Source of the DNA: Hemiscyllium ocellatum
Taxonomy: Eukaryota
NCBI RefSeq assembly: GCF_020745735.1
Contig: NC_083401.1
Coordinates: 78,861,740 to 78,925,739 of the forward strand
DNA: 64,000 nt
Direction: 5' to 3'
Shown here: positions 12,375 to 62,422 of the stretch, piece by piece
How positions within the stretch are numbered: position 1 is the first letter of the stretch
Layout: every line of letters starts with the position of its first letter
Notes under the pieces: generated by a model
Told to the model about the DNA's origin: nothing
Databases searched by the model: none
What the model saw: only the letters and a program-made list of their open reading frames with translations
Position numbers and translations under genes: made by a program

Positions 12375-13430
12375 AGACCATAAGACATGGAGCAGAAGTA
12401 GGCAACAAGTCTGCTTCTGAACCCCCACTTTCCTGCCTGTTCACCATAACCTTGATTCGTTTATTGATTAAAATTCTGTCTCTTAGCCTTGTACATCTAT
12501 AATGAGGAGAAACTGAGGTCTGCAGATGCTGGAGATCAGAGCTGAAAATGTGTTGCTGGAAAAGTGCAGCAGGTCAGGCAGCATCCAAGGAACAGGAAAT
12601 TCTGTTCCTTGGATGCTGCCTGACCTGCTGCGCTTTTCCAGCAACACATTTTCAGCACATCTATAATGACCCAGTCTCACCAGTTCTCTGTAGTAAAGAA
12701 TTCCACACATTTGCTATGCTCTTAGAAAAGGAATTCCCTCATCTCTTACTTAGATATGCAAACTCTTACTCATGCCTTGTGGTCCTAGACTCCCCAACAA
12801 GGGGAAAAACCTCTCCAACACCATAAATCTAATATGCTTCAATGAAGTTATCTCTCATTTTCCTTAATTCCAATGAGTTCGGGCTCAGATTACTGAACCT
12901 CTCATCATAAGACTCTTAGCCTCCATACCCCTGTGAGCTTTCTCTGGACTTCCTCCAATGCTAGTATATTTTTGCTTTGATAATGGGACTAAAATGATAA
13001 ATTATATTCTAGTTGTAATCTAGCCTCTTGTACAGTTTTAGCAAGATTTTCCTGTATTTATATTGCACTCCATTTGCAATGAAGCCAATTGTCTTCCCCA
13101 TTTCCTGCTGAACTTGGATGCTAGCTTTTTCTAACTCATGCACAAAAAACTCTAAATACCTTTTCCTTCAGGTTTTTGCAGTTTTTCTGCATTTAAATAA
13201 TATTCAGATCTTTATGCACCTTTGGCAGTTTTTCATGCAAAAGTGCATAGCCTCACATTTTTCCAACGTTGAATTCCGTCACCCAGGTTTTTGTCCGTTC
13301 ACTCGCCTGTCAATATTCCCTTTGTATATTCTTTGTGTCATCCTCATTATTAACCTGTCTATATATTTCTGTGTCATCCGAAAACCTGGCAATAATACAT
13401 TCACTTCCTTCATCCAAGTCATTATATTGT
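12375..13430 (-). mobile_element. Old CR1 3' fragment, hosts the hairpin PLE at 12506
   Basis: CATAAGACAT.GGAGCAGAAGTAGGC terminus; GAATTCCACA and TGGTCCTAGACTCCCC motifs shared with other old CR1 copies. Confidence 0.7.
12506..12656. mobile_element. Hairpin PLE-derived insertion (family A), 13-bp TSD
   Basis: Arms 12541-12595 and 12602-12656 (55 bp, 1 mismatch); TSD ACATCTATAATGA at 12493-12505 and 12657-12669. Confidence 0.92.
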
Positions 13431-13444
13431 AAATAATTACAGCC

Positions 13445-13660
13445 AGAGTCAGTTGCAAGTCAAGATGGTTTATAGCCTGGAGGACAACTTACAAGTGATG
13501 GTTCTCCCATGGTTAAGAATGTGCTATCCAAGGGATCCTTGGAGTTGCTGCTGTGCATCTTGTTGACGGTACACACTGTTGGCACTATATATTGATGTTA
13601 TAACATGGTGGTGAGATGCCAGTCAACACAACTTCTTCATCTTGAATGGAGTCAACTTTT
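13445..13660 (-). mobile_element. LINE family B fragment
   Basis: CAAGTCAAGATGGT..GGACAACTTACAAGTGATGGTTCTCCCATG; reverse of 11890-12272. Confidence 0.55.
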
Positions 13661-14174
13661 TGATGAAGTGAGGGAAATCAGGGATGCACAAGGTGCCAGA
13701 ATGCAAAGGTCTCAGAGTGTTGTAAATTTAGAGGGGATCACAGCCACAGAGAAATTTGTACATGTGTTCAATCAGCAAGAAGCAGGTGATTGGAGAATGT
13801 AACTTGATGCAAGTGAGGATACAAACAGTGAAGCTTTGGATGAGCTTAAGTTTAGGGAGGCTGCAATGTGGAAGTTCAGCAAGGAAAATACCCAAGTAGC
13901 AAAGTCAGATCATAACAAAAGGCACCAAACTAACATATCAGGAAAAGAAATGAAGCTAGGTATAACTCGGATCATCGTCATTTATCAGGCATGTTTCCAT
14001 GCCAACCGTCAGGGAAAAATGCTCATCCACCCTCAGCAGAACAACACACATCATCAGTGAATTCTTTCTGGTTACACAAGTCATCTTTAATTCAGAATCA
14101 ATAACATAGATGCAAAGGCGTTAAACAGAACGAATAAATTTCAGGACAGTCACCAATGAGACACACGTTCATAA

Positions 14175-14274
14175 GTAACCATGGAAATGAAAAGTAGAGC
14201 CCAGCAGTGAGCATGGAATACAGATTAGCCATCAGAGCTTCACAGCATGACATCAAAACAGTTCCCATGGTAAC
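14175..14274. promoter_or_regulatory. Two RFX X-box-like palindromes in unique sequence (candidate enhancer)
   Basis: GTAACCATGGAAAT at 14175-14188 and GTTCCCATGGTAAC at 14261-14274 (consensus GTNRCCATGGYAAC). Confidence 0.35.
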
Positions 14275-15066
14275 AGACATCTAGTGAGAAATATGGTCAC
14301 AGCATATGCATCGTGAAATTATGTTCTTTAAGTACTCACCATTTATAACATTATTGATGCAATTAGTTTGCCTAACGACAAACCTCGAGTGTATTTAAAC
14401 TTTAATATTTTTATGGGCCCTTCGACGCGTTTAAAGGAGAAGCTGTGGCATTAGAATCCGTTTGGAAGACATGTATCTAGTAATTTCGTATGGAATCAAA
14501 ACAGCTGAAAATTGCTGACTGTTTATAAATGAATTAAAAGCAGAGAGAAAGGAATACCTTCTACTGATTTGTCCAGGAATCAGTCACTGATACTTAACTA
14601 AGGCATGATGGAAAATTAAATATATCAATTTGGCAGAATGGTTGAAAGGATTCACTTTTATTAAATGCAACAACATACTTAAGAATCAAAGTCTATAAAT
14701 TATTGATGCAAAAATCTTGGACTTTTGGATTTTAATGAAGAAGTTATCCTGGATAATTGAATGGCAAAGGAATGACAGACAAAGGAACATCACATACAAG
14801 CATATTAAACATCTACCTACTAATATCACAGAGACAACATCTCCAAACAGAAAGCTCTCTGTTGGTCATGCACTGGTGTGCTAACCTTGTGTCTATGCTT
14901 AAGAGCTGAAGTGGGATTTGAATGCAATAAAAGTGCCTCCAGAGCCATGGCTGATACCCTCTGTGAATCATCACTTTGACTTGCTGGAGAGGATGGGAGG
15001 TTCTGATGATGCTTGCAGTGATGCCCTCAGGATAACTTTGCTACTGCCGCAGCCACATATGCGACT

Positions 15067-15812
15067 AGGAGAAAGTGGATGTTGGAGATCAGAGTCGAAA
15101 AGGGTGGTTCTGGAAAAACACAGCAGGTCAGGCAGCATCCGAGAAGCAAAAGAGTCGACATTTTGAGTGTAAGCCCTTCATTAGAAATATGGGGTGGGGG
15201 TGGAGTGTAGACAAGGTAGTTGAGACATAAATAGGAGGGTGGAGTGTGGTAATGGTAGTTGGGAAGGCGATAGTTAGATGCAGATGGTGGGGGGTGATAG
15301 TGATAAGTTGTTGGGGAGGATGGAGCAGATCAGTGGGCGGGAAGATGGACAGGTAGGACAGTTCAAGAGGCCGGTGCCAAGTTGGAGGGTTGGCTCTGGG
15401 ATGAGGTGGGGGGAGTGGATGTGGAAACTAGTGAAACACCTCTGGGATGCACACACCAAACAACCCCACTGCCCTGTGGCTGACCACTTCAACTCCCCCT
15501 CCCATTCTGCCAAGGACATGCTAGTCCTGGGCCTCCTCCACCACCAAGGCCAAGCCACCCAACACCTGGAGGAAGAACACTTCATCTTCTGCCTTGGGAC
15601 TTTTCAACTATATGGCATCAATGTCGACTTCATCAGTTTCCTCATCTCCCCTCCCCCCACCTCATCCCAGATCCAACTCTCCAACTGGGCACAGCCCTCT
15701 TGACCTGTCCTATCTGTCCATCTTCCTTCCCACCTTTCCGCTCCACCCTCCTCTCCGACCTATCACCATTACCCCCCACTCCCCACCCCCCAACTTGCAT
15801 CAATCTATTGCC
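15067..15812 (+). mobile_element. PLE fragment: GIY-YIG endonuclease C-terminus with an inverted terminal repeat on its 5' side
   Basis: ORF 15278-15703 tail PVADHFNSPSHS..MLVLGLLH..LEEEHFIFCLGTFQLYGINVDF is a typical PLE GIY-YIG end; about 15270-15415 is the reverse complement of about 15650-15810. Confidence 0.88.
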
Positions 15813-16167
15813 TTCACTTTGCTGTTCAAAGTGCAATTTCAAACCCCTCAATGGCAATGTTACGATACAGGGTTAGCAAGCCCAACTAAATCAGTCTGTT
15901 GACCACTGCATCTACAACATACTAAAATTAAAATATTCAATAACCCTCAAAATTATCCAATTGTTCCTAATCAGACTTTATGAATAACAGATCTTGGACA
16001 CCAAGCTTAGAACTTAAACAAAAGAAAAACAACATATTATTAACACTGCAAGTTCAGCACAACAAATCTGAACAACAAAGTGATCCAATTAATATCTAGA
16101 ATGTAAAACTAACCTTCTTTTATCATAATCCCCACTGACACACAGACAGATTGACTGGCAGATACAG

Positions 16168-21039: not shown

Positions 21040-21200
21040 TAGAACATAAAACATAGAACATTACAGCACACTACAGGCTCTTCAGCCCTCAATGTTGTGT
21101 CAACCTGTGAAACTAATCTGAAGCCCATCTAACCTACACCATTCTATTTTCATCCATATGCCTATCCAATGACCATTTAAATACCATTAAAGTTGGTGAG
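21040..21200 (-). mobile_element. CR1-type 3' tail fragment
   Basis: AGAACATAAAACATAGAACATTACAGCAC..CAGGCTCTTCAGCCC. Confidence 0.6.
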
Positions 21201-22694: not shown

Positions 22695-23285
22695 AGGAAC
22701 TTGCAGGTAGTGGCGTTCCCATGTACCTGCTGCTTTTGTGCTTCTAGATAGAAGTGGCTGTGGGTTTGGAAAATGCTGTTGGTGGATTTCTGCATTGCAT
22801 CTTGTAGATACTGCTGCAACTGAGCATTGGTGGTGAAGGGATGGATGCTTGTGAATGTGGTGACAATTAGGTAGGCTGCTATACCCTGGATGGTATCAAG
22901 CTTCTTGAGTGATGTTGGAGCTGCACCCATCTAGGCAAGTGGGGAATATTCCATCACACTCCTGACTTGTGCCTTGTAGATAGTGGATAGGCTATGGGAT
23001 TAGTGGGTTTTGAGAAGACTTGTAGCTGTGGTTGAGGTTCTGAATGTAAGTTTGCTCGCTGAGCTGGAAGATTCATTTTCAGATGTTTCGTAACATCTTC
23101 AGTGAGTCTCTGAATGAAGCCATCATTCGGAAGCTCACTGAAGATGTTACCTAGTACGGTAACAAAATGTCTGAAAACGAATCTTCTAGCTCAGCACGCA
23201 AACCTACATCCAGAGGCTATGGGATGTCAGAAGGTGAGTGACACAAGTTAGTATTGCAAGCCTCTGACCTGCTCCTACATATTTA
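22695..23285 (-). mobile_element. LINE family B fragment, hosts the hairpin PLE at 23001
   Basis: GGAACTTGCAGGTAGTGGCGTTCCCATG; minus ORF MGAAPTSLKKLDTIQ. Confidence 0.7.
23001..23213. mobile_element. Hairpin PLE-derived insertion (family B), 12-bp TSD, decayed hammerhead
   Basis: TSD AGGCTATGGGAT at 22989-23000 and 23214-23225; inverted arms; TCA-CTGAAGA-T-GTTACC/TAGTAC/GGTAAC-AAAA-TGTC-TGA at 23135-23174. Confidence 0.85.
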
Positions 23286-27008: not shown

Positions 27009-27338
27009 GGGGTGGCACGGTGGCTCAGTGGTTAGCACTGCTGCCTCACAGCGCCAGGGATCCGGCTTCAATTCCCGCCTTGGGCAACTGTCTGTGTGGA
27101 GTTTGCACATTCTCCCTGTGTCTGCATGGGTTTCCTCTGGGTGCTTCAGTTTCCTCCCACAGTCCAAAGATGTGCAGGTCAAGTGAATTGGCCATGCTAC
27201 ATTGCCCGTAGTGTTAAGTGCATTAGTCAGGGGTGAATGTAGGGGAATGGGTCTGGGTGGGTTGCTCTTCGGAGGGTCGGTGTGGACTTGTTGGGCCGAA
27301 GGGCCTGTTTCCACACTATAGTGAATCTAATCTAATCT
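27009..27338 (+). mobile_element. HE1 SINE, full length, young
   Basis: GGTGGCACGGTGGCTCAGTGGTTAGCACTGCTGCCTCACAGCGCCAGGG..V-domain..GGGCCGAAGGGCCTGTTTCCACAC..(AATCT)n. Confidence 0.95.
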
Positions 27339-27801
27339 TAAAAAAGAGAGTTGTTTCCCTGACTTCCACGATAATCCTCAACCCACACAACTATATACTC
27401 AGCCCCTCACTGTACTCCTTATACACTCACGACTGTGAGGCCACATTCAGCTCTAACTCCATTTACAAATTTGCTGATGGTACCACTGTAGTGGGCAACA
27501 GCAAGACAGAGTACAGGAAAGAGATAGACAGCTTAGTTACCTTATGTAAAAATGACAATCTCTCCCTCAATGTTAGCAAAATGAAGGAGCTGTGATTGAC
27601 CTTGGGAAGCAGAGTGGAGGACACACCCTGGTCTGGATCGATGGTGCTGAGGTGGAGGTGGTCAAAAGCTTCAAGTTCCTGGGAGTAAATATCACCAAAA
27701 GTCTGTCCTGGTCCATCCACATCAACAGTCAAGAAAACATACCAACACCTCTACTTCCTCAGAAGGCTAAGGAAATTTGGCATGCCCATGAGATTTTTAC
27801 C

Positions 27802-27872
27802 GCTGCAAATGTGTTGCTGGTCAAAGCACAGCAGGTTAGGCAGCATCTCAGGAATAGAGAATTCGACGTTTC
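27802..27872 (-). mobile_element. 71-bp PLE family A insertion, 12-bp TSD
   Basis: Identical to 62183-62253; TSD GAGATTTTTACC at 27790-27801 and 27873-27884. Confidence 0.92.
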
Positions 27873-28026
27873 GAGATTTTTACCAATTGTTATTGATGCA
27901 CCACCGGGAGTATCCTATCTGGATGCATTATGGCTTGGTATGGAAACTGCTCTGCCCAAGGCCCCTAGTTATCACAGAGAAGCCTGAATGCAGCCCAGTC
28001 CATCACAAAAATCAGCCTTCCTTCCA

Positions 28027-31828: not shown

Positions 31829-34462
31829 TTTCCCCATAATATTATTCTAAAATTTCATCTCATGTCATGGTCCCTAGGGATGGAGCCTCAAGTTGCCACA
31901 TATTCAACATATCTGGGCAATACTTCAATGCAACAAAGCAGACTTTCTAATGCATTCTAAATGCTTTATAATTTGAGTATGCAGTTCTCTGTTTTCTCAT
32001 TCCCTTTGATGCTGACGTCCCAGTTGAGTATATCAGTTTAATGTTGGGTGCTTCCAAGTATTTGAGAGGAAACTTTGCCCTTGCATGAGAACCTACCAGC
32101 AAATTGTCATCATGATTTGTCATCTCAAAAGCTGAACTGCAAGTGTCATCAATTATACACTTTGTCATTTGAAATTCGAAACATAAAGGTTTTGATCAGA
32201 TTTTGATAAGGAAAGTTATGTTCTTTTGTAACACCTTAAAAATAACCAATAATATCATTATTTACAGAAAGCAATTTTAATCAGATGAAATTAGCTGCTA
32301 ATCTGATTAAAATGCACAATCTAAGTAATGCTGAGCATCTAAGCTTTTTATTGACACGTTAACTAGTCTAAGTTAGGTGGACCATGGGATGGAAAAATGT
32401 GGTCTGATCCAGTACTGTCAGTTGGTGGGATCACATTAATAAAGAGGAATGCTAAGGAAGGGATACAATTAGGAATGTGGTACTGAGTGGAAAAGAATGA
32501 ATGTAGAGATGGACCAGGAATGAGGTCTTTTAAGGAATTGTGACAATTGTATGTGCTTGTTATTCAATATAATCTACCACGAGGGAGTGCAGTGGAGTGA
32601 ACAGGAAAATTTACTAACAGCTGTGTTTCAGATTTTCTTTGTGAAAATAATTGGATTACTTTGGAGCATGTGTTTGGTTATAAAGTATTATATCATTATA
32701 ATGAATGCTGATAAAAATAAATAGCCTTCTGCACTAATATGATCCTTTGTTATGATCCTAGCTAATGGCAAAAGCGAACAGAGTGAAATCTGACTTTAAA
32801 TAGACTGCATGTTATTTATTTTCTTCTTGTTTATCGTGGAGATTGGTTACTGTACACATTCACAAGAAGATGTCAGTGTACTCTTAACAGAAGAACATAG
32901 AGGTTTGTGACACAAAAGAAAAATACTTATAATGTTACACTGGATAAGAACAATTAGAATCATCGCATTCCAAATATTAGAAAGAATGATTCTTCTCTTT
33001 AACCACACCATTAACCTCAAATAACACTTAAATATCATTGAGGCATGGCATGACTGTAACTGTTTCCTTTGGGAAAATTTCTGCACATCTACCTGAGGCT
33101 ATATTCTTTATAATAAGTTCATAAGATATAGGAGCAGAATTAGGCTATTGGATCCATCAAATCTACTTCAATATTCAGTCATGCCTGTTATGCTCCTAAC
33201 CCCCATTTTCCTGCCTTGTCTCCATAACCCTTCAACTCATTACCAAGTAAAAATCTGTCTAACTCCTCCTTAAATTTCCTCACTGTCCCAGCATCCACCA
33301 CACTTTGGGGTAGTGAATTCCACAGATTCCCAACCCTTTGGAAGAAGTAGTTTCTCCTCAACACTGTTTTAAATTTGCTACCCTTTATCCTAAGACTATG
33401 ATCTCTCATCCTAGAATGCTGCACAATAGGAAGCATCTGATCCATGGCTATTTTATCCATGCCTTTTATCATCTTGAATACCTCAATTTGATCTCCCCTC
33501 ATTCTTCTAAATTCCAGGGAATATAGGCCTAAATTGTTCAATCTCTCTTCATATGACAAACCCCTCATCTCTGGGATGAATCTAGTTAACCTCCTCTGAA
33601 CTACCTCCAATGCCATTACATCTTTCCACAAATAAGAGGACCAAAACTGTGCACAATACTCCAGGTGCAGTCTCACCCAATATCTTTGCAACAACACTTC
33701 CTTACCTTCATATTCTATTCCCTTACCTACAAAAGCCAACATTCCATTCACTTTCTTTATTATTTACTGTATTGCATTCTGGTTTTCTGTGACTCATGAA
33801 TGAGTACACCCAGATCCCCCTGCACCAGATCACCCAAAGTCTCTCCCCATTAGGATAATAAGATGTCTTCCCATTTTTTCAACCCAAATGCATGAGTTCA
33901 CATTTATCCATGTTCAACTCCATCTGCCACATTTTGGCCCACTCTCCTAACTGATCTATATCCGTTTGTAAGATTCTTATTTCCTCATTGCAATTTACGA
34001 TCCCGCCTATTTTTGTGTCATCTGCAAATATGGCTATAGACCTTTCTATCCCTGTGTCCATGTCATTAATGTAGATTGTAAATAGTTGGCATCCAAGGAC
34101 AAAATCCTGTGGCACCCCATAAGCTACATTTTGCCATTCATCAAAAAAAATTCTAACTCTCCGTCTTGTGTCCATGAGCCAGTCATCAAACCAGGCTAAT
34201 GAATTATCCTAATCACATATGATTCAACTTTGTGAATTAACCTTGTGGGGCACCTTACCAAACATTTTCTGGAAGTCAGGATAAATCACAGCATCCCCAT
34301 TATCTAATTTGCTTGTTACTTCTTCAAAGAACTCTAGCAAATGAGTCAAACATGATTTGCCTTTTATAACATCAAGCTGACTCTGATAGATAGCATTTAG
34401 ACTTTCCAAATGTCCTAATATTACTTCCTGGAAAATTGATTCCAACACTTTCCCAGCAAAAG

Positions 34463-34700
34463 ACACAGTGGCACAGTGGTTAGCCAGAGATCCGGGTTCA
34501 ATTCCCACCTCAGGCAATGCTCTGTGTGGAGTTTGTACATTGTGTCTGTGTGGGTTTCCTCCCACAATCCAAAAATGTGTAGGTTAGGTGAACTGGCCAT
34601 GCTAAATTGCTCATAGTGTTAGGTGAAGGGGTAAAATGTGGGTTGGTGTGGATTTGTTGGGCCAAAGGGCCTGTTTCCACACTGTAAGTAATCTAAACTA
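34463..34700 (+). mobile_element. HE1 SINE with internal deletions
   Basis: CACAGTGGCACAGTGGTTAGC..GGGTTCAATTCC..GGGCCTGTTTCCACACTGTAAGTAATCTAA. Confidence 0.88.
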
Positions 34701-34970
34701 ACAGATGTTAAACTAACTGGTTTGTAATTTCCCACATTTTGCCTCCCTCTCTTTTTGAATATTACCCATTTTACAATCCACCATAACCTTTCCTATGTCC
34801 AGGGAATTTTAGAATATTGTAACCAATGAATCTACTATCTCCGTTGTCACTTCCTTTAATATGCTACGATGCAGGACATCAGGCCTGGGAGACTTGTCTG
34901 TCCTCAATCCTAGTTTTGCTTAGCACCTTTTCCTTATCGATGTTGATTATTCTAAGTTCTATTTTATCTC

Positions 34971-43039: not shown

Positions 43040-43154
43040 TAGATAGCGGAGAGACTTTATGGAGTCAGGAGGTGAGTTACTTTCCACAGAATTCGTTGAC
43101 TCTGATCTGCTGTCATAGCCATTGTATCTTTATGCTGGTCCAGTTTAGTTTCTG

Positions 43155-43367
43155 AGGTAAAACAATGACTGCAGATGCTGGAAACCAGATTCTGGATTAA
43201 TGGTGCTGGAAGAGCACAGCAGTTCAGGTAGCATCCAACAAGCAGCGAAATCGACGTTTTGGGCAAAAGCCCTTCATCAGGAATGCATTCCTGACGAAGG
43301 GCTTTTGCCCGAAATGTCGATTTCGCTGCTCGTTGGATGCTGCCTAAACTGTTGTGCTCTTCCAGCA
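43155..43367. mobile_element. Hairpin PLE-derived insertion with two divergent hammerhead cores, 15-bp TSD
   Basis: Loop-less palindrome centred on GAATG|CATTC (43281-43290), arms about 85 bp; TSD CCAGTTTAGTTTCTG at 43140-43154 and 43368-43382. Confidence 0.92.
43287..43322 (+). ncRNA. Minimal type I hammerhead ribozyme motif, slightly decayed
   Basis: CTGACGA-A-GGGC/TTTT/GCCC-GAAA-TGTC; C-to-T change in stem III. Confidence 0.6.
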
Positions 43368-44223
43368 CCAGTTTAGTTTCTGGTTAATGATAGTCAGAGA
43401 TTCAATTACAGTAGTGTGATTGAATGTTAAAGAATGACACTTATATTCTGTCTTATGAGAGATCTTCATTGTCTGATATTTCCATGAAACAAGTGTTGCT
43501 TTGTGATATTTCAGCTCACGTCTTGATATTGTACAGATCTTGCTGCAGTTGGACACAGCCAGCTTTGATGTCTAAGGAGTCATGAATAGTGCAATTATCA
43601 ATGAACATCCTCACTTCTGACTTTATGATGGAGAGAAGGTCATTGATGAAGCAGATAAAGCTGGTTGTGTCTAGGACATTTTCCTGAGGAATTCTGGTAG
43701 AGGTGCCTGACCATCAACAATTACAATGGAAACAATCAGTTCAGAGGATGTGTTTGTGCTGTAATGGAAGGAGTATGCAATGCACTTTATAATGGACTAT
43801 GCTGCTCCCTAATCCATTCAAAAGGTGATCCTCAAGGATATTATATGTATGGCAATAGTTACTCACATGACTGTTTTCTAATAGCACAATCATAAATATC
43901 CTCCATAAACAGGGAACATTATGGTTGTTGGCTGTTTTAACCTCGCCCTTTGTTCTGATTCTTTTACCTCACAGTCATATTACTTCGCAGAGCTGTGTAA
44001 GGGTCTATACCTGAAACAATGACTAATTGGTGTTCTTTTGCCAGCTGTTGCCTGAGCTGCTAAACATTCTCAATGGTCTTCTGTTTCTGCCTTTAAACTC
44101 AAATGCGATATATCCTGCATTGGGGGATTTGAAGCTGAGGAAATTTTCCTTGATGGGCTGCGTAGTTAGTAACTCAACCAGACAGGTTCATATCATTCAG
44201 AACAACAGTTGTTAATTGACCAA

Positions 44224-44531: not shown

Positions 44532-44584
44532 GGGTAAATGAAACAAAAAGCAGGCTCTGTTGAAGTTTTTTTGATAAAAAAAAG

Positions 44585-46045: not shown

Positions 46046-47777
46046 CTTAATGCTTAATGCTCTATTGCAAATAAAATAATAAAATCAAACAGCATTTAAA
46101 AGAAAGATTAAATTCGCTATGCTTTATTATTCTGACTTTGTGTGAATTGTTTTAAAATTAATACCTAAGGTAGTTACTTGAAAATTAAATAAAGCACTTT
46201 TGAGATTTTGCATGTTGCCTGATTCACTAAAATTATATGAATTTGTTTTTTACACAGGATTCATAAAAAATATTGGCCGTATTTCCATCAGCCTAATCCC
46301 ATAAGGTTGCGTGCAAATAATGTACTTAATTTGAAATCATAAAAATTCCTATATTAAAAGACCTCCACATTAATGTCTGCCTGCAGCAGTAGTCTCTCTT
46401 ACTGACACCACAGTTTAAAACATTTTCAAATAATTACAACTCGTTTGAGTTCTGAAGCAGACGTTAATGAGGGTCAGTGCACTGTCAGTACTATTTTGTT
46501 TCTATATAAAGTAAGATTAGAGATAGAAAGTAATTAACTGACACAAAAGGATATGATAGACGTACTTGAAACATTCGGCATGGGGAGATGGTCTGATTAA
46601 GGTCCCTCTGTTTCGTTCTTCACAATCTGATCAGCATCACTTTCACATGGAATTAAACAATTGTGGATTTCACTGCATTCAACTCATTGAAACTTTTCAG
46701 AATCTGACAGAGTTTTCCACTTACTTGTATTGGGAGAAATTTAATGCCCTCCTCCAAGATGGAGTTTGGAGGCAGATGACATTTTAATCAGACAGGAGTC
46801 TGCAGAGTGAAGTATTCACCAACTTCCATCCTTCATGGACAATTCATGCACACTTATGGCCTTCATCCCATCTCTGCCATCATTACAGCAGAGGCGGGCG
46901 GAGCAGTCGCCATGTATGGAGCTCCCTGCGGATTGGGGGAGGGGTAACATGACATTGGAAGAGCAGCCCCAGCACCACCAGCGCAACTCCTGCCCCAGAC
47001 AGTGACCATCTCTCTCCCCTCCTGGTTGCAGTGCTTGGAATAGAGATGGAAGGGTTCAAAGGCAGGATCTTTACCTGAGGTCCTGAACTCGAAAGGCCCC
47101 ACTGCTAGCCACTTAATGGAAAGATTTTTGTCACCTGAATTAAACTCCACCATTCACTGCATCTTTCCAATTTTCTTTTTTTTCAAAAATAAAATCAGCT
47201 CTTCATTTAAGCATTATACAAGTTTTTTATTTTAAAATGGACTTGTCCTTGTTTCTCAGGTGGTATGCACATACGGATTAGGAGTAGGAGTGGGTCACTG
47301 TGTTCACTTACCCCTGGGTATTCTTTGTTTGGCAGACCTGGGCAGTGCAATCAGTAAATTGAAACACGGGGCCAGAACCACTGCTTGGTTCTGTAGAAAT
47401 GTTGGAGGTGTGTGCCTAATTCTCAGGGGAGGACATGGAAAACAAAGGACATATAGCAAAACAGAGGTCTGATTTTCTGGCCATTCTCTAGGCACAAAGG
47501 TAGCTCTGGGTGAGTCACAATGCTCAGGCAAGGAGGACAAGTGGTGGTGACAGAGAGGAGTCAAAGATTGACTGTCAATAGCTCCCAAGCTGCCATCAAT
47601 AATATGTGGAACTTGCTGAAATGCAATATAGTAAATGGATCCCAATCCAGCAACATATGCAGGCCTTCAGTTTACAAACATAATCTATTTGCTTTCAAGT
47701 AACTGACTTCTGTTGCTCTTAAGCCAAATGTGGACTCTGATTGCTTATTTTTGTCAGGATACAAGACTATCAGAAGT

Positions 47778-47970
47778 AAGTTTTGAGAAGATTTGTAGCT
47801 CAGGCTGAGGTTCTGGATGTAGGTTTGCTCGCTAAGCTGGAAGCTTCATTTTCAGATGTTTTATCACCATACTAGGTAACGTCACCAGCAAACCTCTGGA
47901 CGAAGCCTCCAGAGGTGATGAAACATTTGAAATCAAACCTTCCAGCTCAGTGAGCAAACCTACATCCAGA
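47778..47970. mobile_element. Hairpin PLE-derived insertion (family B), degenerate 12-bp TSD
   Basis: TTCTGGATGTAGGTTTGCTCGCTAAGCTGGAAG vs CTTCCAGCTCAGTGAGCAAACCTACATCCAGAA; TSD ACTATCAGAAGT (47766-47777) and ACTGTCATAAGT (47971-47982). Confidence 0.82.
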
Positions 47971-48204
47971 ACTGTCATAAGTGTATCCATGATTTTCCAT
48001 AAACTACTTTTGTGTGAAAATTGGAACTATTCGCTATCACCAGATGAGAAGCAGTGAGATAGCTCTGAAATCAAGCCTCTTGGTTTGTCATGACAAAGGT
48101 TCACATTCTTTTTAATATGAAGCTATAATTTATTCCAATCTTTAAAATAAAACTCAGAGGAGTCTGTATTTTGCCAGCTGGGTCAATTATGCTCAGAATT
48201 ATGC

Positions 48205-48440
48205 TCAGAAGCTGGTTCGAGTGTTTGAACTGCTGCAGTCCATGGTGCAGGTAGATCCACAATGCAGTCAGGGAGGGAGTTCCAGGATTAAAACCCAGCC
48301 ACAGTTTAGGAACGGCCATGTATTTTGAAGTCAGGATAATGAGTGTCATGGAGAGGAACTTTCAGGTTGTAATGTTTGCATGTATTGGCTGCTGTTCCCC
48401 TTCTAGATGGTTTGGAATGTCCTGTCTAAGGAGATGACTA
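48205..48440 (-). mobile_element. LINE family B 3' fragment
   Basis: TTGAACTGCTGCAGTCCATG..GGGAGGGAGTTCCAGGAT..AAGTCAGGAT. Confidence 0.65.
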
Positions 48441-48639
48441 TGTCAGACTGATGCTGAATTGATCTGTGGAACAGCTCTCCTAATTTTGATATCAGATCCC
48501 ATATTTAAGGAGGGCAGATAAATAACAGGATCAACGAGGCTGAGTTTGCCATTGTCTTTCTGGTATCTAGACTGATTTGAGGTGATCCTGCAAGTTTCAT
48601 TCCATTTCTGAGACTTTCTAGTGGTTGATACAACTGAGT

Positions 48640-49110
48640 GGCTTCCCAAGAATCAAATACAGCACTATGGGAGTGAAGTAGCATGCAGCTCAGACCAGGT
48701 GAGGACAGCACTTATCCTTCCTCAAGTGAAGTGGATAGGTTTTTTTTATGGACAATCAATTATGATTACATAATCATCATTGGCCTTTTTAAATCCAGAT
48801 TTTATTTGAACTCAGATTTGACCATCTGTCTTAGTAGGTGTGAATTTGGGTCCCTATGTCATTACTTGGGATCTCTGGATTACTTAGGAGAAAGTGAGGA
48901 CTGCAGATGCTGGAGATCAGAACTTAAAAATGTGTTGCTGGAATAACACAGCAGGTCAGGCAGCATCAAAGGAACAGGAGAATCGACGTTTCGGGCATAA
49001 GAAGGGCTTATGCCCGAAACGTCGATTCTCCTGTTCCTTTGATGCTGCCTGACGTGCTGCGCATCTCTGGATTACTTGTCCAGTAACAATACCATTATGT
49101 CATTCCCTCC
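48640..49110 (-). mobile_element. SINE family S2 copy, hosts the hairpin PLE at 48886
   Basis: CAGACCAGGTGAGGACAGCA..AATCCAGATTTTATTTGAACTCAGATTTGACCATCTG..CTCTGGATTACTTGTCCAGTAACAATACC. Confidence 0.65.
48886..49062. mobile_element. Hairpin PLE-derived insertion (family A), 15-bp TSD
   Basis: TSD ATCTCTGGATTACTT at 48871-48885 and 49063-49077; arms meet at CATAAG-AAGGG-CTTATG. Confidence 0.92.
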
Positions 49111-49282: not shown

Positions 49283-49424
49283 NNNNNNNNNNNNNNNNNN
49301 NNNNNNNNNNNNNNNNNNNNNNNNNNNNNNNNNNNNNNNNNNNNNNNNNNNNNNNNNNNNNNNNNNNNNNNNNNNNNNNNNNNNNNNNNNNNNNNNNNNN
49401 NNNNNNNNNNNNNNNNNNNNNNNN
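49283..49424. other. Assembly gap (142 N)
   Basis: Run of N. Confidence 1.
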
Positions 49425-51081: not shown

Positions 51082-51166
51082 TGAGTTGAAAAGGGTGGCA
51101 CTAGAAAAGCACAGCAGGTTAGCTAGCATCCGAGGAGCAGAAGAGTTGACATTTCAGGCATAAGCC
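51082..51166 (-). mobile_element. PLE family A terminal-repeat fragment
   Basis: GAAAAGCACAGCAGGTTAGCTAGCATCCGAGGAGCAGAAGAGTTGACATTTCAGGCATAAGCC. Confidence 0.75.
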
Positions 51167-55811: not shown

Positions 55812-57218
55812 TGTGGTGTCACCGTTTAATAAAAGTGGTAAGGAAAAGCCAGGGAACAATAGACCAGTGAGCCTGACATCAGTGATGGGCAAGTTGTTAG
55901 AGTGAATCCTGAGTGAGACAATTTAAATATATTTGGAAAGGCAAGGATTTGTTAGGGATAGTAAACATGGCTTTGTGCATGGGAAATTATGTCTTACAAA
56001 CTTGATTGAGTTTTTTGAAGAAGTAACAAAGAGGATTGATGAAGGCAGAGAGTTGGACATGATCTATACGGACTTCAGTAAGGTATTCGACAAAGTTCCT
56101 CATGGTAGACTGGTTAGCAAGGTTAGATCACATGGAATACTGGGAGAATTAACCATTCTGATACAGAACTGGTATGCGAATAGAAGACAGAGGGTAGTGG
56201 TGGAAGGTTGCTTTTCAGACTGGAGGCCTGTCACCAGTGGTGTTCCACAAGATCAATGTTGGGTCCATTGCGTTTCATAATTTATATAATTGATTTTGAT
56301 GTGAACATAGGAGGTATGGTTAGTAAGTTTGCAGATGACACCAAAATTGGAGGTGTTGTGGACAGTGAAGAAGGTTACCTCAGAATACAACTGGATTTTG
56401 ATCAGGTGGGCTAATGGCTGAGGAATGGCAGATGGAGTTTAATTCAGATCAATATGAGGTGCTACGTTTTGGAAAGGCAAATCAGGGCAGGACTGATGCA
56501 CTTGTTAGTAAGATCCTAGGGAGGGTTGCTGAACGAAGAGACCTTGGAGTGCAGGTTCATAGTTCCTTGACAGTGCAGTCACAGGTGGATTGGATAGTAA
56601 AGATGGCATGGTATACTTTCCTTGATTGGTCAGAGGATTGAGTATAGGAGTTGGGAGGTCATATTATAGGTATACAGGTCTACTATTGGAATACAGTGTG
56701 CAATTCTCGTCTCCCTTCTGTAGCAAGGATGTCGTGAAAGTTGAAATGGCTCAGAAAATGTTACAAGGATGTTGTCAAGCTTGGAGGGTTTGAGCTGTAG
56801 GGAGAGGCTGAATAGATTGGGGCTATTTTCCCTGGAGTGTCAGAGGCTGAGCTTTATATAAGTTCATAGATGTTTACAAAATCATGAGGGGCACGGATAA
56901 AGTAAATAGATAACGTCTTTTCCCCAGGGTGAGGGAGTGCAAAACTAGAGGGCATAGGTTTAGGGTCAAAGGGAAAAGATTTAAAGGTGACTTAACAGGC
57001 AATATTTTCATGCAGAGGGTGATACATGTATAGAATGAACTGCAAGAGGAAGTGATGGAGACTGGTACAATTGCAGTATTGAAAATACATCTGAATGGGT
57101 ACATGCATAGGAAGGGTTTAGAGTGGTATAGGCCAAGTGCTGGCAAATGGGTCTAGATTAATTTAGGATATCTGGTCGGTATGGACAAATTGGACCAGAG
57201 GGTCTGTTTTCGACTCTA
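55812..57218 (+). mobile_element. CR1 ORF2 RT to 3' end, 5'-truncated, disabled
   Basis: KHGFVHGKLCLTNLIEFFEEVT..YTDFSKVFDKVPHGRL..GVPQ; SKFADDTKIGG; 3'UTR motif. Confidence 0.92.
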
Positions 57219-57407
57219 AAAGGCTTGTGGTGGAATAGCAAGAGATAATCAACATCAGAAGTTACGAAAGAATGGCCACTTGGCATGATACCAGACAGCA
57301 AATGTAGAACCACCACCAAGTAAAGATAAATATTTTCAAGAAAGTAGAGAAGATAACTAGCAATTAAAAAAAGGCTGTTTTGAAATTTTCTTGAAGCAAA
57401 ATGATTC

Positions 57408-57562
57408 CGGCATGAAACTCCCTCCCTAATGTAGCTATTTCTACACCAACTGATTGCAGTGGTTCAAGAGGCAGCTCACCACCATCTTCTTCAGGATAGC
57501 TAGAGATGGGCAATGAATACTGGCACAGCCAATGATGCTGACATCTTGAGAATGAATAAAAA
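57408..57562 (+). mobile_element. LINE family B 3' tail
   Basis: AACTCCCTCCCTAA..GGTTCAAGAGGCAGCTCACCACCATCTTC..GATGGGCAATGAATACTGGC..GAATGAATAAAA. Confidence 0.7.
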
Positions 57563-57754
57563 CAATCATCGTGTGTATAAAATGGAGAGAAAATTAAGAG
57601 GCCAAGTAAGGGATACATTTAAGCAGTTAGCAGGGAAAAGAGGAGTTATGGTTTTGATTAACTAGGGCAAAAAAAAGACAAATATATTGTACAGATTGAG
57701 AATTTATATTGTGGAGTGGATTTAGATGAGCACAAACCCAAATTATAGAATGTA

Positions 57755-57952
57755 GGGTTAGTTAGCTCAGTTGGCTGGATGGCTGATTTAGGACATAAAA
57801 TAATGCAAATAGTATAGTTTGGATCCCTGCACTGATGAGATTACCCACTTTCTGAGGTGTTGTGACCCTCAAGTTAAACTACTACTGGCCATTTTCTCTC
57901 TTTCTAATGAGAAAGTAACCATTGGTCTTTAGGACTCTGGCAATTTTACCTC
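57755..57952 (+). mobile_element. tRNA-derived SINE family S3
   Basis: GTTAGCTCAGTTGGCTGGATGGCTG..CTGAGGTGTTGTGACCCTCAAGTTAAAC..TTTCTAATGAG. Confidence 0.65.
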
Positions 57953-58649
57953 TTATTGCAGAATAAATTTGCAATCACATCAGAGAATGTCAATGGAATG
58001 AACCTAGCAAGGCTGTCTGGATAAATGGAAGGACTGTTACACATATTTTCCCAGGAGAGATGGGAGGATCCCAATGGCAAATTATGCAACTATATGATTA
58101 AACCACACATTAAGAATTTATAGCCAAAAAATAATCAACAGATTAGAAAGGGAACTATTGTAACTTGATGGGGTGCAGGTCTCTGTGTATATCCAACAGC
58201 CTCTAAACATGCTGAAGCTGGCTGTCTATGCCTGGTGCCAACCTATCCGTATTGATTGTGTTGCTGCAATCCCAGCAAGCTTTGTGTCAGGTTACCCAGT
58301 GTCCACCTGCTCCTCCTCTGTCTACTTGTGTATCTCAATTATATCATGAATTAACCATCAATACAAGGCCTTCTCCTTCCTGGGCTGAGCAGCTGGTCTC
58401 TGGCAGTCCTACATGTGCCATGACCCTGGGTGTCTCTGTGGCGATGTGGCAGTGTTGTGCGCAACAGCAAGTATTACTGGTTCTAATGAGGCTAACCTTC
58501 CCATTGAGCAGTAGTACCTGAACTGGTTGGGGATACAGGGGACAGCTTTACCGACGCATCTATGCTCTTTTCCACAGAGGGATAGGAGAGGACTTCTTCA
58601 GGCACTATCTTTTTTGACTCCAGAAACTGTTGAATTTGGATCATAACCT

Positions 58650-59020
58650 CACAAGAAATAAGCACAAGATGAGGCCATTCAGCCCCTTGAGCCTGCCTTG
58701 TCAGTCAATAAGCACATAACTGATATGGCCCTGGTCTCAATTTCACTTTTGTGCCAACTCAGCATAGTCATTGACTCCTTAATGTTTCAAAAAATCTAAT
58801 TCATATTTAAATACTACCAGTTATCTAGCCTCCATAACATTCTGGTTTATACAATTTCAGACACTGACTATCCCCAGAGAGAAGAAATTCCTTTGCAATT
58901 CAGTTTAAATGAATGTCTCCTTACTATGCCACTAGTGGAAACATTTTTTTCAACATCTACCCTATGACACCCTCAGAATCTCATATGTTTCAATAAGATT
59001 ACCCTTCATTCTACTAAACT
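58650..59020 (-). mobile_element. Old CR1 3' fragment
   Basis: GGCCATTCAGCCCCTTGAGCCTG; GTTTCAATAAGATTACCCTTCATTCTACTAAACTC. Confidence 0.65.
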
Positions 59021-60329: not shown

Positions 60330-60590
60330 TTTGTATGGACTGAAACTGACGGACAAAAGAAGTACAGGTGAAGTAAGAAAAGTATTTTTTCACACAACGA
60401 GGAGTTAGGGCATGGCATGAACTGCCTGAAAAATGTCATGGATGTAGGTTCAATGGAGATATTGAGAGGGCAATGGATAGTTATTTTGTTCGAACTGGGG
60501 TGAAGAGATATGAGGAAAAGGCAGTAGATTGGCAATAGCTAATCAAACCTGTGCAAGCATGATGGGGCAAATAGCTTCCATCAATGTCAT
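60330..60590 (+). mobile_element. Old CR1 3' fragment
   Basis: TTTTTTCACACAACGAGGAGTTAGGGCATGGCATGAACTGCCTG (FFTQR..W.ELP). Confidence 0.6.
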
Positions 60591-61147
60591 AACAACACTG
60601 GACATTTTTCTTATGTTTTTGTCTTCTTTTATTTCTGCTGAGTTTTTTAAATTTTAGTTTTGTAACCAGGATGACTCTGGAGAATGTGACATTGAGCACT
60701 TTTACTGTACTCAGCTATTCCTGTACTTGAGTAGGTGTGACAATAAAATCTAATTCGAATTTTATAATCATGAATCCTTAGTGCAAGTAGTTAGAGTATG
60801 CACTTGAATGTACGTATGCAAATATCACCAGCAAGAGCCTTTGATTTAAACAGACTCCCACCTGTTTAGGGCAGATATTTTTCAGACACAGGAGATTCAT
60901 TTCCCTACTCCTCAAAGTTTCTAACATCCTTCTTGTGAATGTTATCAATCCCAATATTATTAAAGATTCTATTCATAATAAAAGGGAATGTTTCTGGGGA
61001 GGAAATTTTTAGTTAGTCATTTTCATAAATAAATCCTGAAAAATTGACCATAATTGTTATTTAATGGCACCAAGATGTGGATTGTTAGTGAAACAATTGC
61101 AGGACTTCAGTTCAACAGCAACAAACAAATAGAAAGTAGGGCCCCTT

Positions 61148-61990
61148 TTTGTTTTGTTCACTTGTGAGATCTGATGTCGCTGGTCAAAATAACATTATTG
61201 TCCATTCTTAATTATCCTTGAGAAGGTGGTAGTGAACTGCATTCTTGAACAACTCCAGTCTGTGCAGTGTAGATATGCCCACAGGAGGCTGCTCTGGGAT
61301 TTTGACCTTGTGTCAGTAAAGGTTAGTGCTACAGTTCTAAGTCAGAATCATGAATGACTCGGAGAAGAATTTCCATATTGTGGTGCTCCCACATGCCTCC
61401 TGCCCTTGTTCTTACAGACTGTAGAGTTTTGACAGGGGTTATAATAAAGTGCCACACTAAATCCTGTAGTTGGGACAAATTGTAACTGCTGTGCAGGGAT
61501 GGTGAAGGAATGAATATTTAAGATGGTGGATAGGGTATCAATCAAGTGGGCTGTTTTTTTTATTCCCAGATGGTGTTGAACATATTGAATAATGTTTGGG
61601 TTGCAACCTTCTGGGCCAGATGGAGTATTCAATTCACTTCTGATGTGTGGTTGGTGGACAGGTTTGGGAGCCAGAGAAGAGATCTTTTCTACGGAATTCC
61701 CAGCCACTGATCAGCATTCAAATTACTTTAGTTTCCTTTTGTTCAGGCCTCCGAAGTCTGTGCATGGCAGTGTAGAACCAGAAATCATCACTGCAAAGGA
61801 CGTTGGCACACAGATCACCATGCATGGACATGGACCTTCTGAGTGTCTACACAGCTTAGAAGGAGTGTTGTCTCTGACCTTCTCTTGTTATTTATATGGA
61901 TGATCTGATTCAGTTGAGGATCAATGGTAAGATCTAAGATTCAGATGGTGGAAGATTTAGTTTTGGTAATAATATTGAACGGCCAGTTTA
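61148..61990 (-). mobile_element. LINE family B fragment, decayed
   Basis: CTTGAGAAGGTGGTAGTGAACTGC; CCCAGATGGTGTTGAAC; GATCAATGGTAA. Confidence 0.6.
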
Positions 61991-62147
61991 GTCCTTCCAA
62001 ACTTCCAAGAAAGCTAATAAAGCCACACAGCATATTGGTGAAAGCTGATGAATTTTCCTTGGTTGGTACCTGAGAATTAATTAATAGAGTTTAGTAATAT
62101 CTCTCGCTTGCACCCATCCTTCTCTCTGTGAGTCTACTCATCAATGA

Positions 62148-62354
62148 GTAAAAAATGAGGTCTGCAGATGCTGGAGATCACAGCTGCAAATGTGTTGCTG
62201 GTCAAAGCACAGCAGGTTAGGCAGCATCTCAGGAATAGAGAATTCGACGTTTCGAGCATAAGCCCTTCATCAGGAATTATGCTCGAAACGTCGAATTCTC
62301 TATTCCTGAGATGCTGCCTAACCTGCTGTGCTTTGACCAGCAACACATTTGCAG
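62148..62354. mobile_element. Very young hairpin PLE-derived insertion (family A), 14-bp TSD
   Basis: Perfect 80-bp arms 62182-62261 and 62277-62356, 15-nt loop; TSD CTACTCATCAATGA at 62134-62147 and 62355-62368. Confidence 0.95.
62240..62278 (-). ncRNA. Minimal type I hammerhead ribozyme with intact core
   Basis: Minus strand AATTC-CTGATGA-A-GGGC/TTAT/GCTC-GAAA-CGTC-GAATT: 5-bp stem I, 4-bp stem II, palindromic loop-less stem III (ACGT); predicted GUC cleavage between 62246 and 62245. Confidence 0.78.
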
Positions 62355-62422
62355 CTACTCATCAATGACCATGAAGAATCTGCTTTGTGGATTCGAGAGG
62401 TCAGTATAGTACGATTGACAGA

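What the first reader, a model, noticed from the sequence alone, without database searches (positions are those of the whole stretch)
12493..62368. Recurrent class of TSD-flanked asymmetric PLE hairpins with fixed short-arm endpoints
Seen: six hairpins (12506, 23001, 43155, 47778, 48886, 62148) from at least two unrelated PLE families, all with 12-15-bp TSDs, variable centres and a left arm carrying about 35-60 extra nt. Short arms end at the same base in independent copies: CACATTT(T/G)CAGC in family A (12656, 62355, and the solo insert at 27802) and AACCTACATCCAG(A) in both family B copies (23213, 47970). Inference: reverse transcription starts at a fixed internal site about 35 nt before the RNA end, and a second priming or template switch adds the longer inverted arm. 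Each hairpin would then be a de novo product rather than a MITE. Inverted pLTRs with tails are known for PLEs, but this density of minimal TSD-bearing hairpins gives a clean mechanistic readout.
Basis: partly seen in the sequence, partly recalled or inferred. Interest (0 to 1): 0.72.

Follow-up and report, generated by a model that had tools for sequence, protein, structure and literature searches.

The report
Penelope retrotransposon fold-back insertion scars
The six small hairpins are real. They are the known insertion scar of Penelope-like retrotransposons in a shark genome: two truncated end-copies joined head to head, a roughly 35-base tail on one side only, and a short target duplication.

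Summary
All six hairpins sit at the stated coordinates with target-site duplications (TSDs) of 10-15 bp. Each has its own centre and an outer extension of 33-60 nt on one arm only.

Four of six tail-less ends of family A fall on one base, 33/34 nt from the tailed end: A1, A6, the solo insert and a fragment at 51084. The two family B ends agree within 1-2 nt. A3 (44 nt) and A5 (58 nt) are exceptions.

A larger inverted copy at 15068-15826 joins a diverged family-A-like terminus (75-83% identical) to the C-terminal part of a GIY-YIG endonuclease. The full-length relatives of that remnant are RVT_1 + GIY-YIG proteins, which is the Penelope-like element (PLE) plan.

The architecture is already described: an inverted 5'-truncated copy with a 30-40 bp tail at one end (Arkhipova 2013; Craig 2021). 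Frangieh et al. 2024 showed that a PLE protein nicks and extends both target strands and starts reverse transcription at two adjacent internal sites, with the tail lying between them.

The scan reached the same verdict on at least nine other pieces of this genome. A genome-wide endpoint plot could not be made with these tools. The N gap (49283-49424) lies outside every element and was not filled.

The parts
12493..12669 (.). Hairpin A1. TSD 12493-12505 and 12657-12669 (13 bp, exact). Insert 12506-12656. Tail 12506-12540 (35 nt). Tailed arm (sense on the minus strand) runs to about 12598; tail-less arm is 12602-12656. Both arms begin at the first base after the min-hammerhead cut site.
22990..23224 (.). 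Hairpin B1. TSD 22990-22999 and 23215-23224 (10 bp, 11 with an ambiguous A). Insert 23000-23214. One-sided tail 23000-23037 (38 nt). Arms about 87% identical, with two indels.
27790..27884 (-). Solo tail-less insertion. TSD 27790-27801 and 27873-27884 (12 bp, exact). Insert 27802-27872 (71 nt), 100% identical to both arms of A6. Its 3' end lies at the same base as the A1 and A6 tail-less ends. It sits inside a LINE reverse-transcriptase ORF.
43140..43382 (.). Hairpin A3 (diverged subfamily). TSD 43142-43154 and 43370-43382 (13 bp, 15 with a shared CC). Insert 43155-43369. One-sided extension 43155-43200 (46 nt). Arms 43201-43285 and 43286-43369. The centre is a perfect palindrome about 6 nt upstream of the CUGA box.
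47767..47982 (.). Hairpin B2. TSD 47767-47777 and 47972-47982 (11 bp, 2 mismatches). Insert 47778-47971. One-sided tail 47778-47810 (33 nt). Also present at the orthologous site in organisms B and C.
48871..49077 (.). Hairpin A5. TSD 48871-48885 and 49063-49077 (15 bp, exact). Insert 48886-49062. One-sided extension 48886-48945 (60 nt). The turn lies in the helix II loop of the hammerhead motif. Also present at the orthologous site in organisms B and C.
62135..62368 (.). Hairpin A6. TSD 62135-62147 and 62356-62368 (13 bp, exact). Insert 62148-62355. Tail 62148-62181 (34 nt). Arms 62182-62266 and 62272-62355. At the centre the tailed arm runs about 20 nt further in than the other arm.
3922..4047 (+). 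Linear (non-hairpin) 5'-truncated family A copy with the tail at its 3' end. It starts about 5 nt upstream of the CUGAUGA box. The TSD is not resolvable (possibly 7 bp).
15068..15826 (.). Large old inverted copy. Tailed arm 15068-15429 (sense on the minus strand). Sense segment 15430-15634 with the GIY-YIG C-terminal remnant (peptide 15428-15649, plus strand). Second arm 15635 to about 15826. Arms 83% identical. No TSD found. The second arm stops about 170 nt short of the end.
51084..51166 (-). Old family A fragment whose outer end again lies at the tail-less site (33 nt from the tailed end in A6 coordinates). The TSD is only weakly recognisable.
49283..49424 (.). Assembly gap (N). It lies outside all elements, was not filled and is not needed for the finding.

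Best explanation
These are dead-on-arrival insertion products of Penelope-like retrotransposons (PLEs), not hairpin transposons.

Proposed steps:
1. The element's protein (reverse transcriptase plus GIY-YIG endonuclease) nicks both strands of a target 10-15 bp apart.
2. Each 3'-OH primes reverse transcription of element RNA at one of two fixed start sites 33-38 nt apart near the end of the pseudo-LTR.
3. The cDNA started at the distal site carries the 'tail'; the cDNA started at the proximal site does not.
4. Both cDNAs run only 60-130 nt, to or just past the minimal hammerhead motif.
5. Their 3' ends pair through a short palindrome and are filled in. The result is a head-to-head pair inside one target-site duplication.

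When only one strand is extended, the product is a linear copy. It carries the tail (3922-4047) or lacks it (27802-27872).

Shown here: the anatomy, the TSDs, the recurrent tail-less endpoint, the absence of primer-template homology at the outer junctions, the link of a diverged family-A-like terminus (75-83% identical) to a PLE endonuclease ORF, and the very high copy number in three related species.

Inferred from published biochemistry on an Anolis element: nicking and extension of both strands, and two internal start sites.
For: Structure and TSDs.

Recurrent tail-less end: 4 of 6 family A ends fall on one base, and the 2 family B ends agree within 1-2 nt. The simulated chance for family A is 5e-4 or less.

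The tail-less site acts as the terminus of a single-arm insertion with a perfect 12-bp TSD.

In all 6 clean hairpins the outer extension is on exactly one arm. If each arm chose its site independently, the probability is at most 0.016.

Outer junctions share 0-2 nt with the template (read). This fits initiation without homology to the target.

PLE identity:
- Peptide 15428-15649 lies upstream of a diverged family-A-like terminus, 75-83% identical to the hairpins.
- It matches whale-shark fragment P0001 (56% identity, E 9e-24).
- It matches residues 744-809 of P0075, an 813-aa RVT_1 + GIY-YIG protein (E 1e-10).
- The same order (GIY-YIG ORF end, about 300 nt, hammerhead-like motif, core, tail) occurs in a sevengill-shark locus.

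Hammerhead: the motif fits the min-HHR descriptor of Cervera & de la Pena 2014 (PMC4209133). It has CUGAUGA, an extra nucleotide, a G10.1-C11.1 helix II, GAAA, a palindromic CG and a UC cut (sequence).

Copy number and terminus: 50,000-100,000 contig pieces per run match A5/B2. About 3,000 contigs per run break at 48885-48887 into unrelated, AT-rich flanks, which marks a sharp tailed terminus.

Literature: PMC11167929, PMC8557442, PMC3846280.
Against: - A3 and A5 end 10 and 24 nt inside the common site.
- The large copy has no TSD, and its second arm stops about 170 nt short of the end.
- Rfam calls no hammerhead anywhere in the window, even at E up to 10 on single copies.
- No intact PLE ORF lies in the window.
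- Family B is tied to PLEs only by its architecture and a decayed hammerhead-like motif.
- In vitro, start-site use did not differ between the two strands (PMC11167929), whereas here every clean hairpin has one arm with and one without the extension. That strict pairing is not explained by the published data.
- The genome-wide endpoint distribution could not be read, because the loose-end table was cut to six rows per run.
Confidence: 0.85

Rival explanations
1. Single-cDNA snap-back. One target-primed cDNA starts at the tailed end, folds back on a short palindrome at its 3' end and copies itself. The second arm stops short, and the end is joined to the target by repair. This is the self-priming idea of Arkhipova et al. 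2013.
For: Palindromes or small hairpin-prone sequences lie at the turns: a perfect palindrome centre in A3, the helix II stem-loop in A5 and a GAATTC-like site in A1. PMC3846280 proposes self-priming from the same kind of junction palindromes.
Against: - A self-templated second arm has no reason to stop at one fixed base, yet 4 of 6 family A ends and both family B ends do.
- The same base is the terminus of a single-arm insertion with its own TSD.
- The arm that runs further at the centre is the tailed one in A6 but the tail-less one in A5 and in the large copy. There is therefore no constant 'first' arm.
- Both target strands are extended in vitro (PMC11167929).
Confidence: 0.09
2. Short non-autonomous template. 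The minis are full-length copies of a short RNA and not extreme 5' truncations of PLE mRNA. The RNA would be a pLTR-only or retrozyme-like transcript, or a run-off from a start site in the upstream pLTR, and PLE protein would mobilise it in trans. The insertion chemistry is the same as in the best explanation.
For: - Inner ends cluster at the hammerhead motif. The long arms of A3 and A6 and the linear copy end 4-8 nt upstream of the CUGA box. A5 and the 51084 fragment end in helix II. Both arms of A1 end at the predicted cut site.
- Only one of nine family A copies extends into the ORF.
- A 2026 preprint (10.64898/2026.07.22.740005) argues that animal retrozymes are non-autonomous PLE derivatives.
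Against: The sample is nine copies in one window. Reverse-transcriptase stalling at a stable helix II would give the same clustering. No RNA data were examined. In Anolis, no reads began or ended at the ribozyme cut site (PMC11167929).
Confidence: 0.3
3. A foldback or MITE-type DNA transposon whose hairpin is copied as a unit by a transposase.
For: The inserts are short, palindromic, TSD-flanked and very numerous.
Against: - Every copy has a different centre and different arm lengths.
- TSD length varies from 10 to 15 bp.
- The ends are asymmetric (one-sided tail), so there are no matching terminal inverted repeats.
- Linear single-arm copies exist.
- The sequence continues into a PLE endonuclease ORF.
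Confidence: 0.01

Closest known systems
Penelope-like element insertion signature: inverted 5'-truncated copy plus a 30-40 bp 'tail' at one end (Arkhipova et al. 2013, PMC3846280; Craig et al. 2021, PMC8557442)
   Same: Head-to-head inverted arms inside one TSD. An optional 31-40 bp extension on one arm only. Palindromes at the inverted junction. TSDs of variable length. A hammerhead motif in the repeated terminus.
   Different: Here both arms are cut down to 60-130 nt, so no ORF or direct pLTR remains. Copy number is very high: tens of thousands of matching contig pieces per run.
Poseidon element of Anolis carolinensis, in vitro system (Frangieh et al. 2024, PMC11167929)
   Same: Two reverse-transcription start sites 30-40 nt apart, downstream of the hammerhead. 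Both target strands are used. There is no homology between the primer and the start site. Targets are AT-rich. The region just upstream of the proximal site is AC-rich in both families here.
   Different: In vitro, both strands used both sites alike, whereas here each clean hairpin has exactly one arm with and one without the extension. The distance from the hammerhead cut to the proximal site is 43-63 nt here, against about 85-92 nt in PAc. No biochemistry exists for the shark elements.
LINE-1 twin priming (5' inversions)
   Same: The second target strand primes a second cDNA on the element RNA. The two cDNAs are joined by microhomology, which gives an inverted 5' part inside one TSD.
   Different: In L1 the two segments cover adjacent parts of the RNA. 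Here both arms cover the same part, and the second primer starts at a fixed site rather than at a site of chance homology.
Minimal (dimer-type) hammerhead ribozymes of metazoan PLEs (Cervera & de la Pena 2014, PMC4209133)
   Same: CUGAUGA, an unpaired nucleotide after position 9, a G10.1-C11.1 helix II, GAAA, no helix III apart from a palindromic CG, and thousands of dispersed copies per genome.
   Different: Self-cleavage was not tested. The Rfam models do not score the motif.

Membership tests
Penelope-like elements (EN+ PLEs) | [quoted passage not shown] | tested here: inconclusive
   Only the C-terminal roughly 70 residues of the endonuclease survive (15428-15649). They lie upstream of a family-A-like terminus. 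They match residues 744-809 of an 813-aa RVT_1 + GIY-YIG protein (E 1e-10) and whale-shark fragments. The long relatives carry RVT_1 + GIY-YIG. Pfam does not call the remnant itself. No RT belonging to this element lies in the window. Family B has no ORF link.
Penelope-like elements (EN+ PLEs) | An inverted 5'-truncated copy adjoining the element (head-to-head arms) | tested here: met
   Seven inverted structures were found, six of them inside intact TSDs.
Penelope-like elements (EN+ PLEs) | A 30-40 bp 'tail' extension present at one end only | tested here: met
   A1 35, A6 34, B1 38 and B2 33 nt, each on one arm only. A3 (46 nt) and A5 (60 nt) are longer than the canonical range.
Penelope-like elements (EN+ PLEs) | Short target-site duplications of variable length | tested here: met
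   10, 11, 12, 13, 13, 13(15) and 15 bp.
Penelope-like elements (EN+ PLEs) | A hammerhead ribozyme motif in the repeated terminus | tested here: inconclusive
   The sequence fits the published min-HHR descriptor by inspection (PMC4209133). No Rfam hammerhead model scores it. Cleavage cannot be tested with these tools.
Penelope-like elements (EN+ PLEs) | Direct pseudo-LTRs from a partial tandem arrangement | tested here: not met
   No direct repeat of the terminus flanks any copy in this window. This is expected for copies truncated to less than one pLTR, so it does not bear on origin.
MITE / foldback DNA transposon | Matching terminal inverted repeats, a fixed TSD length and copies that share the whole unit including the centre | tested here: not met
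   The ends are asymmetric, TSDs range from 10 to 15 bp, and every copy has a unique centre.

The most novel reading that the evidence does not exclude
The strict one-of-each rule (every clean hairpin has one arm with and one without the outer extension, and the arms of young copies are near-identical to each other) would mean that the two cDNAs are not independent events. A single dimeric PLE particle would sit on one RNA with its two active sites in register with the two start sites about 34 nt apart, each site serving one nicked target strand. The very many 100-200 nt minis would then be run-off copies from a start-site pair close to the RNA's 5' end (upstream pLTR) and not extreme truncations. 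In that case the hammerhead region marks the 5' limit of the template.
Probability: 0.25. Interest if true: 0.5.

Novelty: new member of a known kind. Interest (0 to 1): 0.2.

Why it matters
The result confirms, in a shark genome and in two unrelated families, that the genomic 'tail' of Penelope-like elements marks two fixed reverse-transcription start sites, as the 2024 in vitro study of a lizard element proposed. It also shows that the proximal site can be the terminus of an insertion by itself.

For annotation, tens of thousands of small palindromes in elasmobranch genomes should be labelled as PLE insertion scars and not as MITEs, miRNA-like hairpins or new ribozyme elements. Rfam miRNA models give spurious sub-threshold hits on them.

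One point goes beyond the literature and needs a whole-genome census: the strict pairing of one tailed and one tail-less arm, together with the clustering of inner ends at the hammerhead. This window alone cannot settle it.

Tried and rejected
- Rfam at gathering thresholds on the whole window gave no family. Rfam at E up to 10 on A3 and on the linear copy gave only spurious miRNA or snoRNA-like hits and no hammerhead.
- Pfam on the endonuclease remnant gave nothing, even at E 10. Pfam on P0001 also gave nothing.
- PDB sequence search with the endonuclease fragment gave no meaningful hit.
- The ESM Atlas feature search gave GIY-YIG clusters at 0.88, which is only a lead.
- The metagenome scan for a 19-nt tail motif, meant to collect more copies, returned 44 loci. 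All matched over only 19-27 nt and are chance hits.
- Read laying was meant to give the genome-wide endpoint profile. It confirmed the sharp tailed terminus and the copy number. Its loose-end table was cut to six rows per run, and A5's subfamily-specific block after the tail breaks alignments at 48921. The peak at the tail-less site could therefore not be read.
- No empty site was found in organisms B or C, because both A5 and B2 are already present there.
- The look-up of encoding contigs for the whale-shark fragment P0002 found it not on record. The closest relatives are EukProt whale-shark models without contigs.
- The sevengill-shark locus L045 holds one family-A-like linear terminus and no hairpin, so it added no endpoints.
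- RNA folds of the terminus are no more stable than shuffles, with z from -1.5 to +0.2.
- The MITE reading was rejected for the reasons given under rivals.


Full report
**The observation**

All six hairpins exist at the stated places. The repeat finder gives arms of 53-85 nt at 92-98% complementarity for A1, A3, A5 and A6, and 59 nt at 86% for B2. B1 is an older hairpin with gaps.

Exact string matching fixes the inserts and their target-site duplications (TSDs):

| Copy | Insert | TSD |
|---|---|---|
| A1 | 12506-12656 | 13 bp |
| A3 | 43155-43369 | 13 bp (15 with a shared CC) |
| A5 | 48886-49062 | 15 bp |
| A6 | 62148-62355 | 13 bp |
| Solo | 27802-27872 | 12 bp |
| B1 | 23000-23214 | 10-11 bp |
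| B2 | 47778-47971 | 11 bp, 2 mismatches |

A scan of the whole window for short-range inverted repeats returns eight pairs, and seven of them are these elements. Families A and B have no detectable similarity to each other.

The assembly gap at 49283-49424 begins 205 nt past A5's right TSD. No element touches it and no claim needs continuity across it. 

BLAST of the inserts against the window finds three more family A copies:
- a linear, 5'-truncated copy at 3922-4047 with the tail at its 3' end;
- an old fragment at 51084-51166;
- a large inverted structure at 15068-15826.

**Orientation and endpoints**

The strand that carries CUGAUGA ... GAAAC is the sense strand. In every hairpin of this window the sense strand is the right arm read on the plus strand. 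The left arm is therefore the antisense copy, and it carries the true element end. I call that end E.

I aligned every arm to one real copy, the A6 long arm, without building a consensus. Outer ends of the tail-less arms, in nt from E:

| Copy | nt from E |
|---|---|
| A1 | 34 |
| A6 | 33 |
| Solo | 33/34 |
| 51084 fragment | 33 |
| A3 | 44 |
| A5 | 58 |

The difference between 33 and 34 is a one-base ambiguity, because the flank begins with the next template base. Four of six ends therefore fall on one base. A simulation gives 5e-4 or less for that if ends were spread evenly over 30-90 positions.

B1 ends at CCAGA and B2 at CCAGAA(C), which is the same site within 1-2 nt.

A3 (a subfamily only 75-80% identical to the others) and A5 are exceptions.

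The one-sided extension is 35 nt in A1, 34 in A6, 38 in B1 and 33 in B2. It is 46 nt in A3 and 60 nt in A5.

**Identity**

The large copy links a family-A-like terminus to a coding remnant. This terminus is 75-83% identical to the hairpin copies.
- Its left arm (15068-15429) is an antisense copy from E inwards.
- At 15430 the sequence turns to sense and reads the end of an ORF.
- It then runs on through a 3' UTR that pairs with the left arm (15287-15419 with 15647-15779, 83%).

Evidence on the 74-residue remnant:
- Pfam does not recognise it.
- A word search finds one relative, P0001, which one search's neighbouring models identify as a whale-shark gene model (E 2e-13, 56% identity).
- An exhaustive search with the P0001 endonuclease part finds 1273 cluster representatives. 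The closest are whale-shark, skate, stingray and sevengill-shark models.
- The long hits (609-883 aa) carry the match at their C-terminus, and Pfam calls GIY-YIG in them. RVT_1 is also called in P0075, P0112 and P0054. P0070 has GIY-YIG only.
- The window's remnant aligns directly to residues 744-809 of one such 813-aa protein (E 1e-10).

This is the defining ORF plan of endonuclease-containing Penelope-like elements.

A sevengill-shark locus shows the same order independently: GIY-YIG ORF end, about 300 nt, a hammerhead-like motif, the conserved core, then the tail.

Family B is assigned to PLEs only by its identical architecture and a decayed motif of the same kind.

**The hammerhead motif**

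Rfam never reports a hammerhead here. By inspection the sense strand fits the minimal, dimer-type descriptor that Cervera & de la Pena 2014 defined for metazoan PLEs. It has:
- CUGAUGA;
- one extra nucleotide;
- a helix II that opens with G10.1-C11.1;
- GAAA;
- no helix III beyond a palindromic CG;
- a UC cut.

I count this as met by inspection only, and as inconclusive for function.

**What is known**

- Arkhipova et al. [quoted passage not shown] They also describe an inverted pLTR 37 bp shorter than the full ones, 8-10 bp TSDs, and palindromes at the inverted junction.
- Craig et al. [quoted passage not shown]
- Frangieh et al. 2024 purified an Anolis PLE protein. They showed that it cleaves and extends both target strands. 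[quoted passage not shown] The genomic tail is the sequence between those two sites.

The one correction is that E need not be the RNA's 3' end.

**Mechanism as read from this window**

In each hairpin the plus strand of the left TSD copy runs straight into the antisense copy starting at E. The minus strand of the right TSD copy runs straight into an antisense copy starting at the proximal site. Both 3'-OH ends of a staggered cut have therefore been extended by cDNA.

The outer junctions share only 0-2 nt with the template (A3 two, A6 and B1 one, the rest none). This agrees with initiation without homology.

The solo insert (perfect 12-bp TSD, 100% identical to both arms of A6) shows that the proximal site is a start site in its own right. 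The linear copy at 3922 shows the same for the distal site, although its own TSD is not resolvable.

A simple snap-back of one cDNA is disfavoured for two reasons. A self-templated arm has no reason to stop at one fixed base. Also, the arm that reaches further at the centre is the tailed arm in A6 but the tail-less arm in A5 and in the large copy.

The turns lie at short palindromes: a perfect palindrome centre in A3, the helix II stem-loop in A5 and a GAATTC-like site in A1. Such palindromes would let the two antisense cDNA ends pair.

**Two regularities beyond the published description**

1. All six clean hairpins carry the outer extension on exactly one arm. In four of them it has the canonical tail length, and it is longer in A3 and A5. 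If each arm chose its site independently, this would happen with probability 0.016 at most. In vitro, the two strands did not differ in start-site use.
2. Eight of nine family A copies have their inner ends within or a few bases upstream of the hammerhead motif. Both arms of A1 begin at the first base after the predicted cut.

Both points were also raised by earlier notes on other pieces of this genome (s1-191588, s1-147033). With nine copies I can only say that this window agrees with them.

**Reads**

Contigs of four runs from three organisms were laid on 47700-49110.
- 50,000-100,000 contig pieces per run match B2 and A5, so both families are very abundant in all three species.
- About 3,000 contigs per run break at 48885-48887 into flanks with no consensus (agreement 0.33, AT-rich). 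This marks the tailed terminus sharply.
- Contigs of organisms B and C run from unique flank into A5 (48616-48911) and into B2 (47947-48298). Both insertions therefore predate the split of these species, and no empty site is available.
- The pile of loose ends at 48921 is a subfamily-variable block just after the tail and is not an end.
- The table was cut to six rows per run, so the peak at the tail-less site could not be read.

**Verdict**

The feature is real, and the mechanism reading is correct. It is ordinary for this transposon class and already explained in print. The scan has reached the same conclusion on at least nine other pieces of the same genome.

I rate it a new member of a known kind, with low interest.

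Noticed in passing
window 27233-27987 (+) and 6140-8092 (-): These are LINE-type reverse-transcriptase ORF remnants (RVT_1: E 7e-6, below Pfam's cut-off, in 27233-27595; E 5e-9 in 6826-7590). The solo PLE fragment is inserted into the first one at 27802-27872.
   Followed up: partly
window 48886-48918 (joints): In 1-9 contigs per run the first 33 nt (the tail) occur twice in tandem ('goes back 33', 48918 to 48886). This is a tail duplication at the distal start site. It could be a re-initiation or slippage between the two start sites.
   Followed up: no
window 47779 and 48887 (joints): In 4-9 contigs per run, in all three organisms, the tailed end of family B is joined directly to the tailed end of family A on opposite strands. 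This tail-to-tail arrangement is the reverse of the hairpin plan and is unexplained.
   Followed up: no
alignment A1; window 62148-62232 (-), 12506-12590 (-): The tail's CAGCAUCU and the core's GGAUGCUG are complementary. Both are among the most conserved blocks, including in a sevengill-shark copy, and they enclose the proximal start site, whose immediate upstream block is the most variable. MFE folds pair them in A6 and A1, but the folds are no more stable than shuffles. No covariation is available.
   Followed up: partly
window 43220-43351: Rfam miRNA-precursor models (MIR475, mir-90, mir-722) give sub-threshold hits with small E-values on the A3 hairpin. Such PLE scars could be mistaken for miRNA genes.
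   Followed up: no
P0001, P0027, P0034 (public gene models): Public gene models from a whale shark, a stingray ('mucin-2 isoform X2') and a sevengill shark ('receptor-transporting protein 3-like') end in a PLE GIY-YIG fragment. These models look chimeric with transposon sequence.
   Followed up: partly
L045 11400-12075: The sevengill-shark locus has a PLE endonuclease ORF end followed, about 300 nt later, by a family-A-like terminus (77-87% identical over the core). The lineage therefore predates the split of hexanchiform and other sharks.
   Followed up: partly
window 6001-10000, 34001-36000, 56001-58000: These blocks show strong GC skew (-0.26, +0.30, -0.25, +0.30 in 2-kb windows). The first overlaps the LINE RT remnant. 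The others were not examined.
   Followed up: no
window, all PLE copies: All seven inverted copies have the tailed arm on the left of the plus strand. Only the linear copy at 3922 has the opposite orientation. This may be chance (about 0.07) or an orientation bias within a transcription unit.
   Followed up: no
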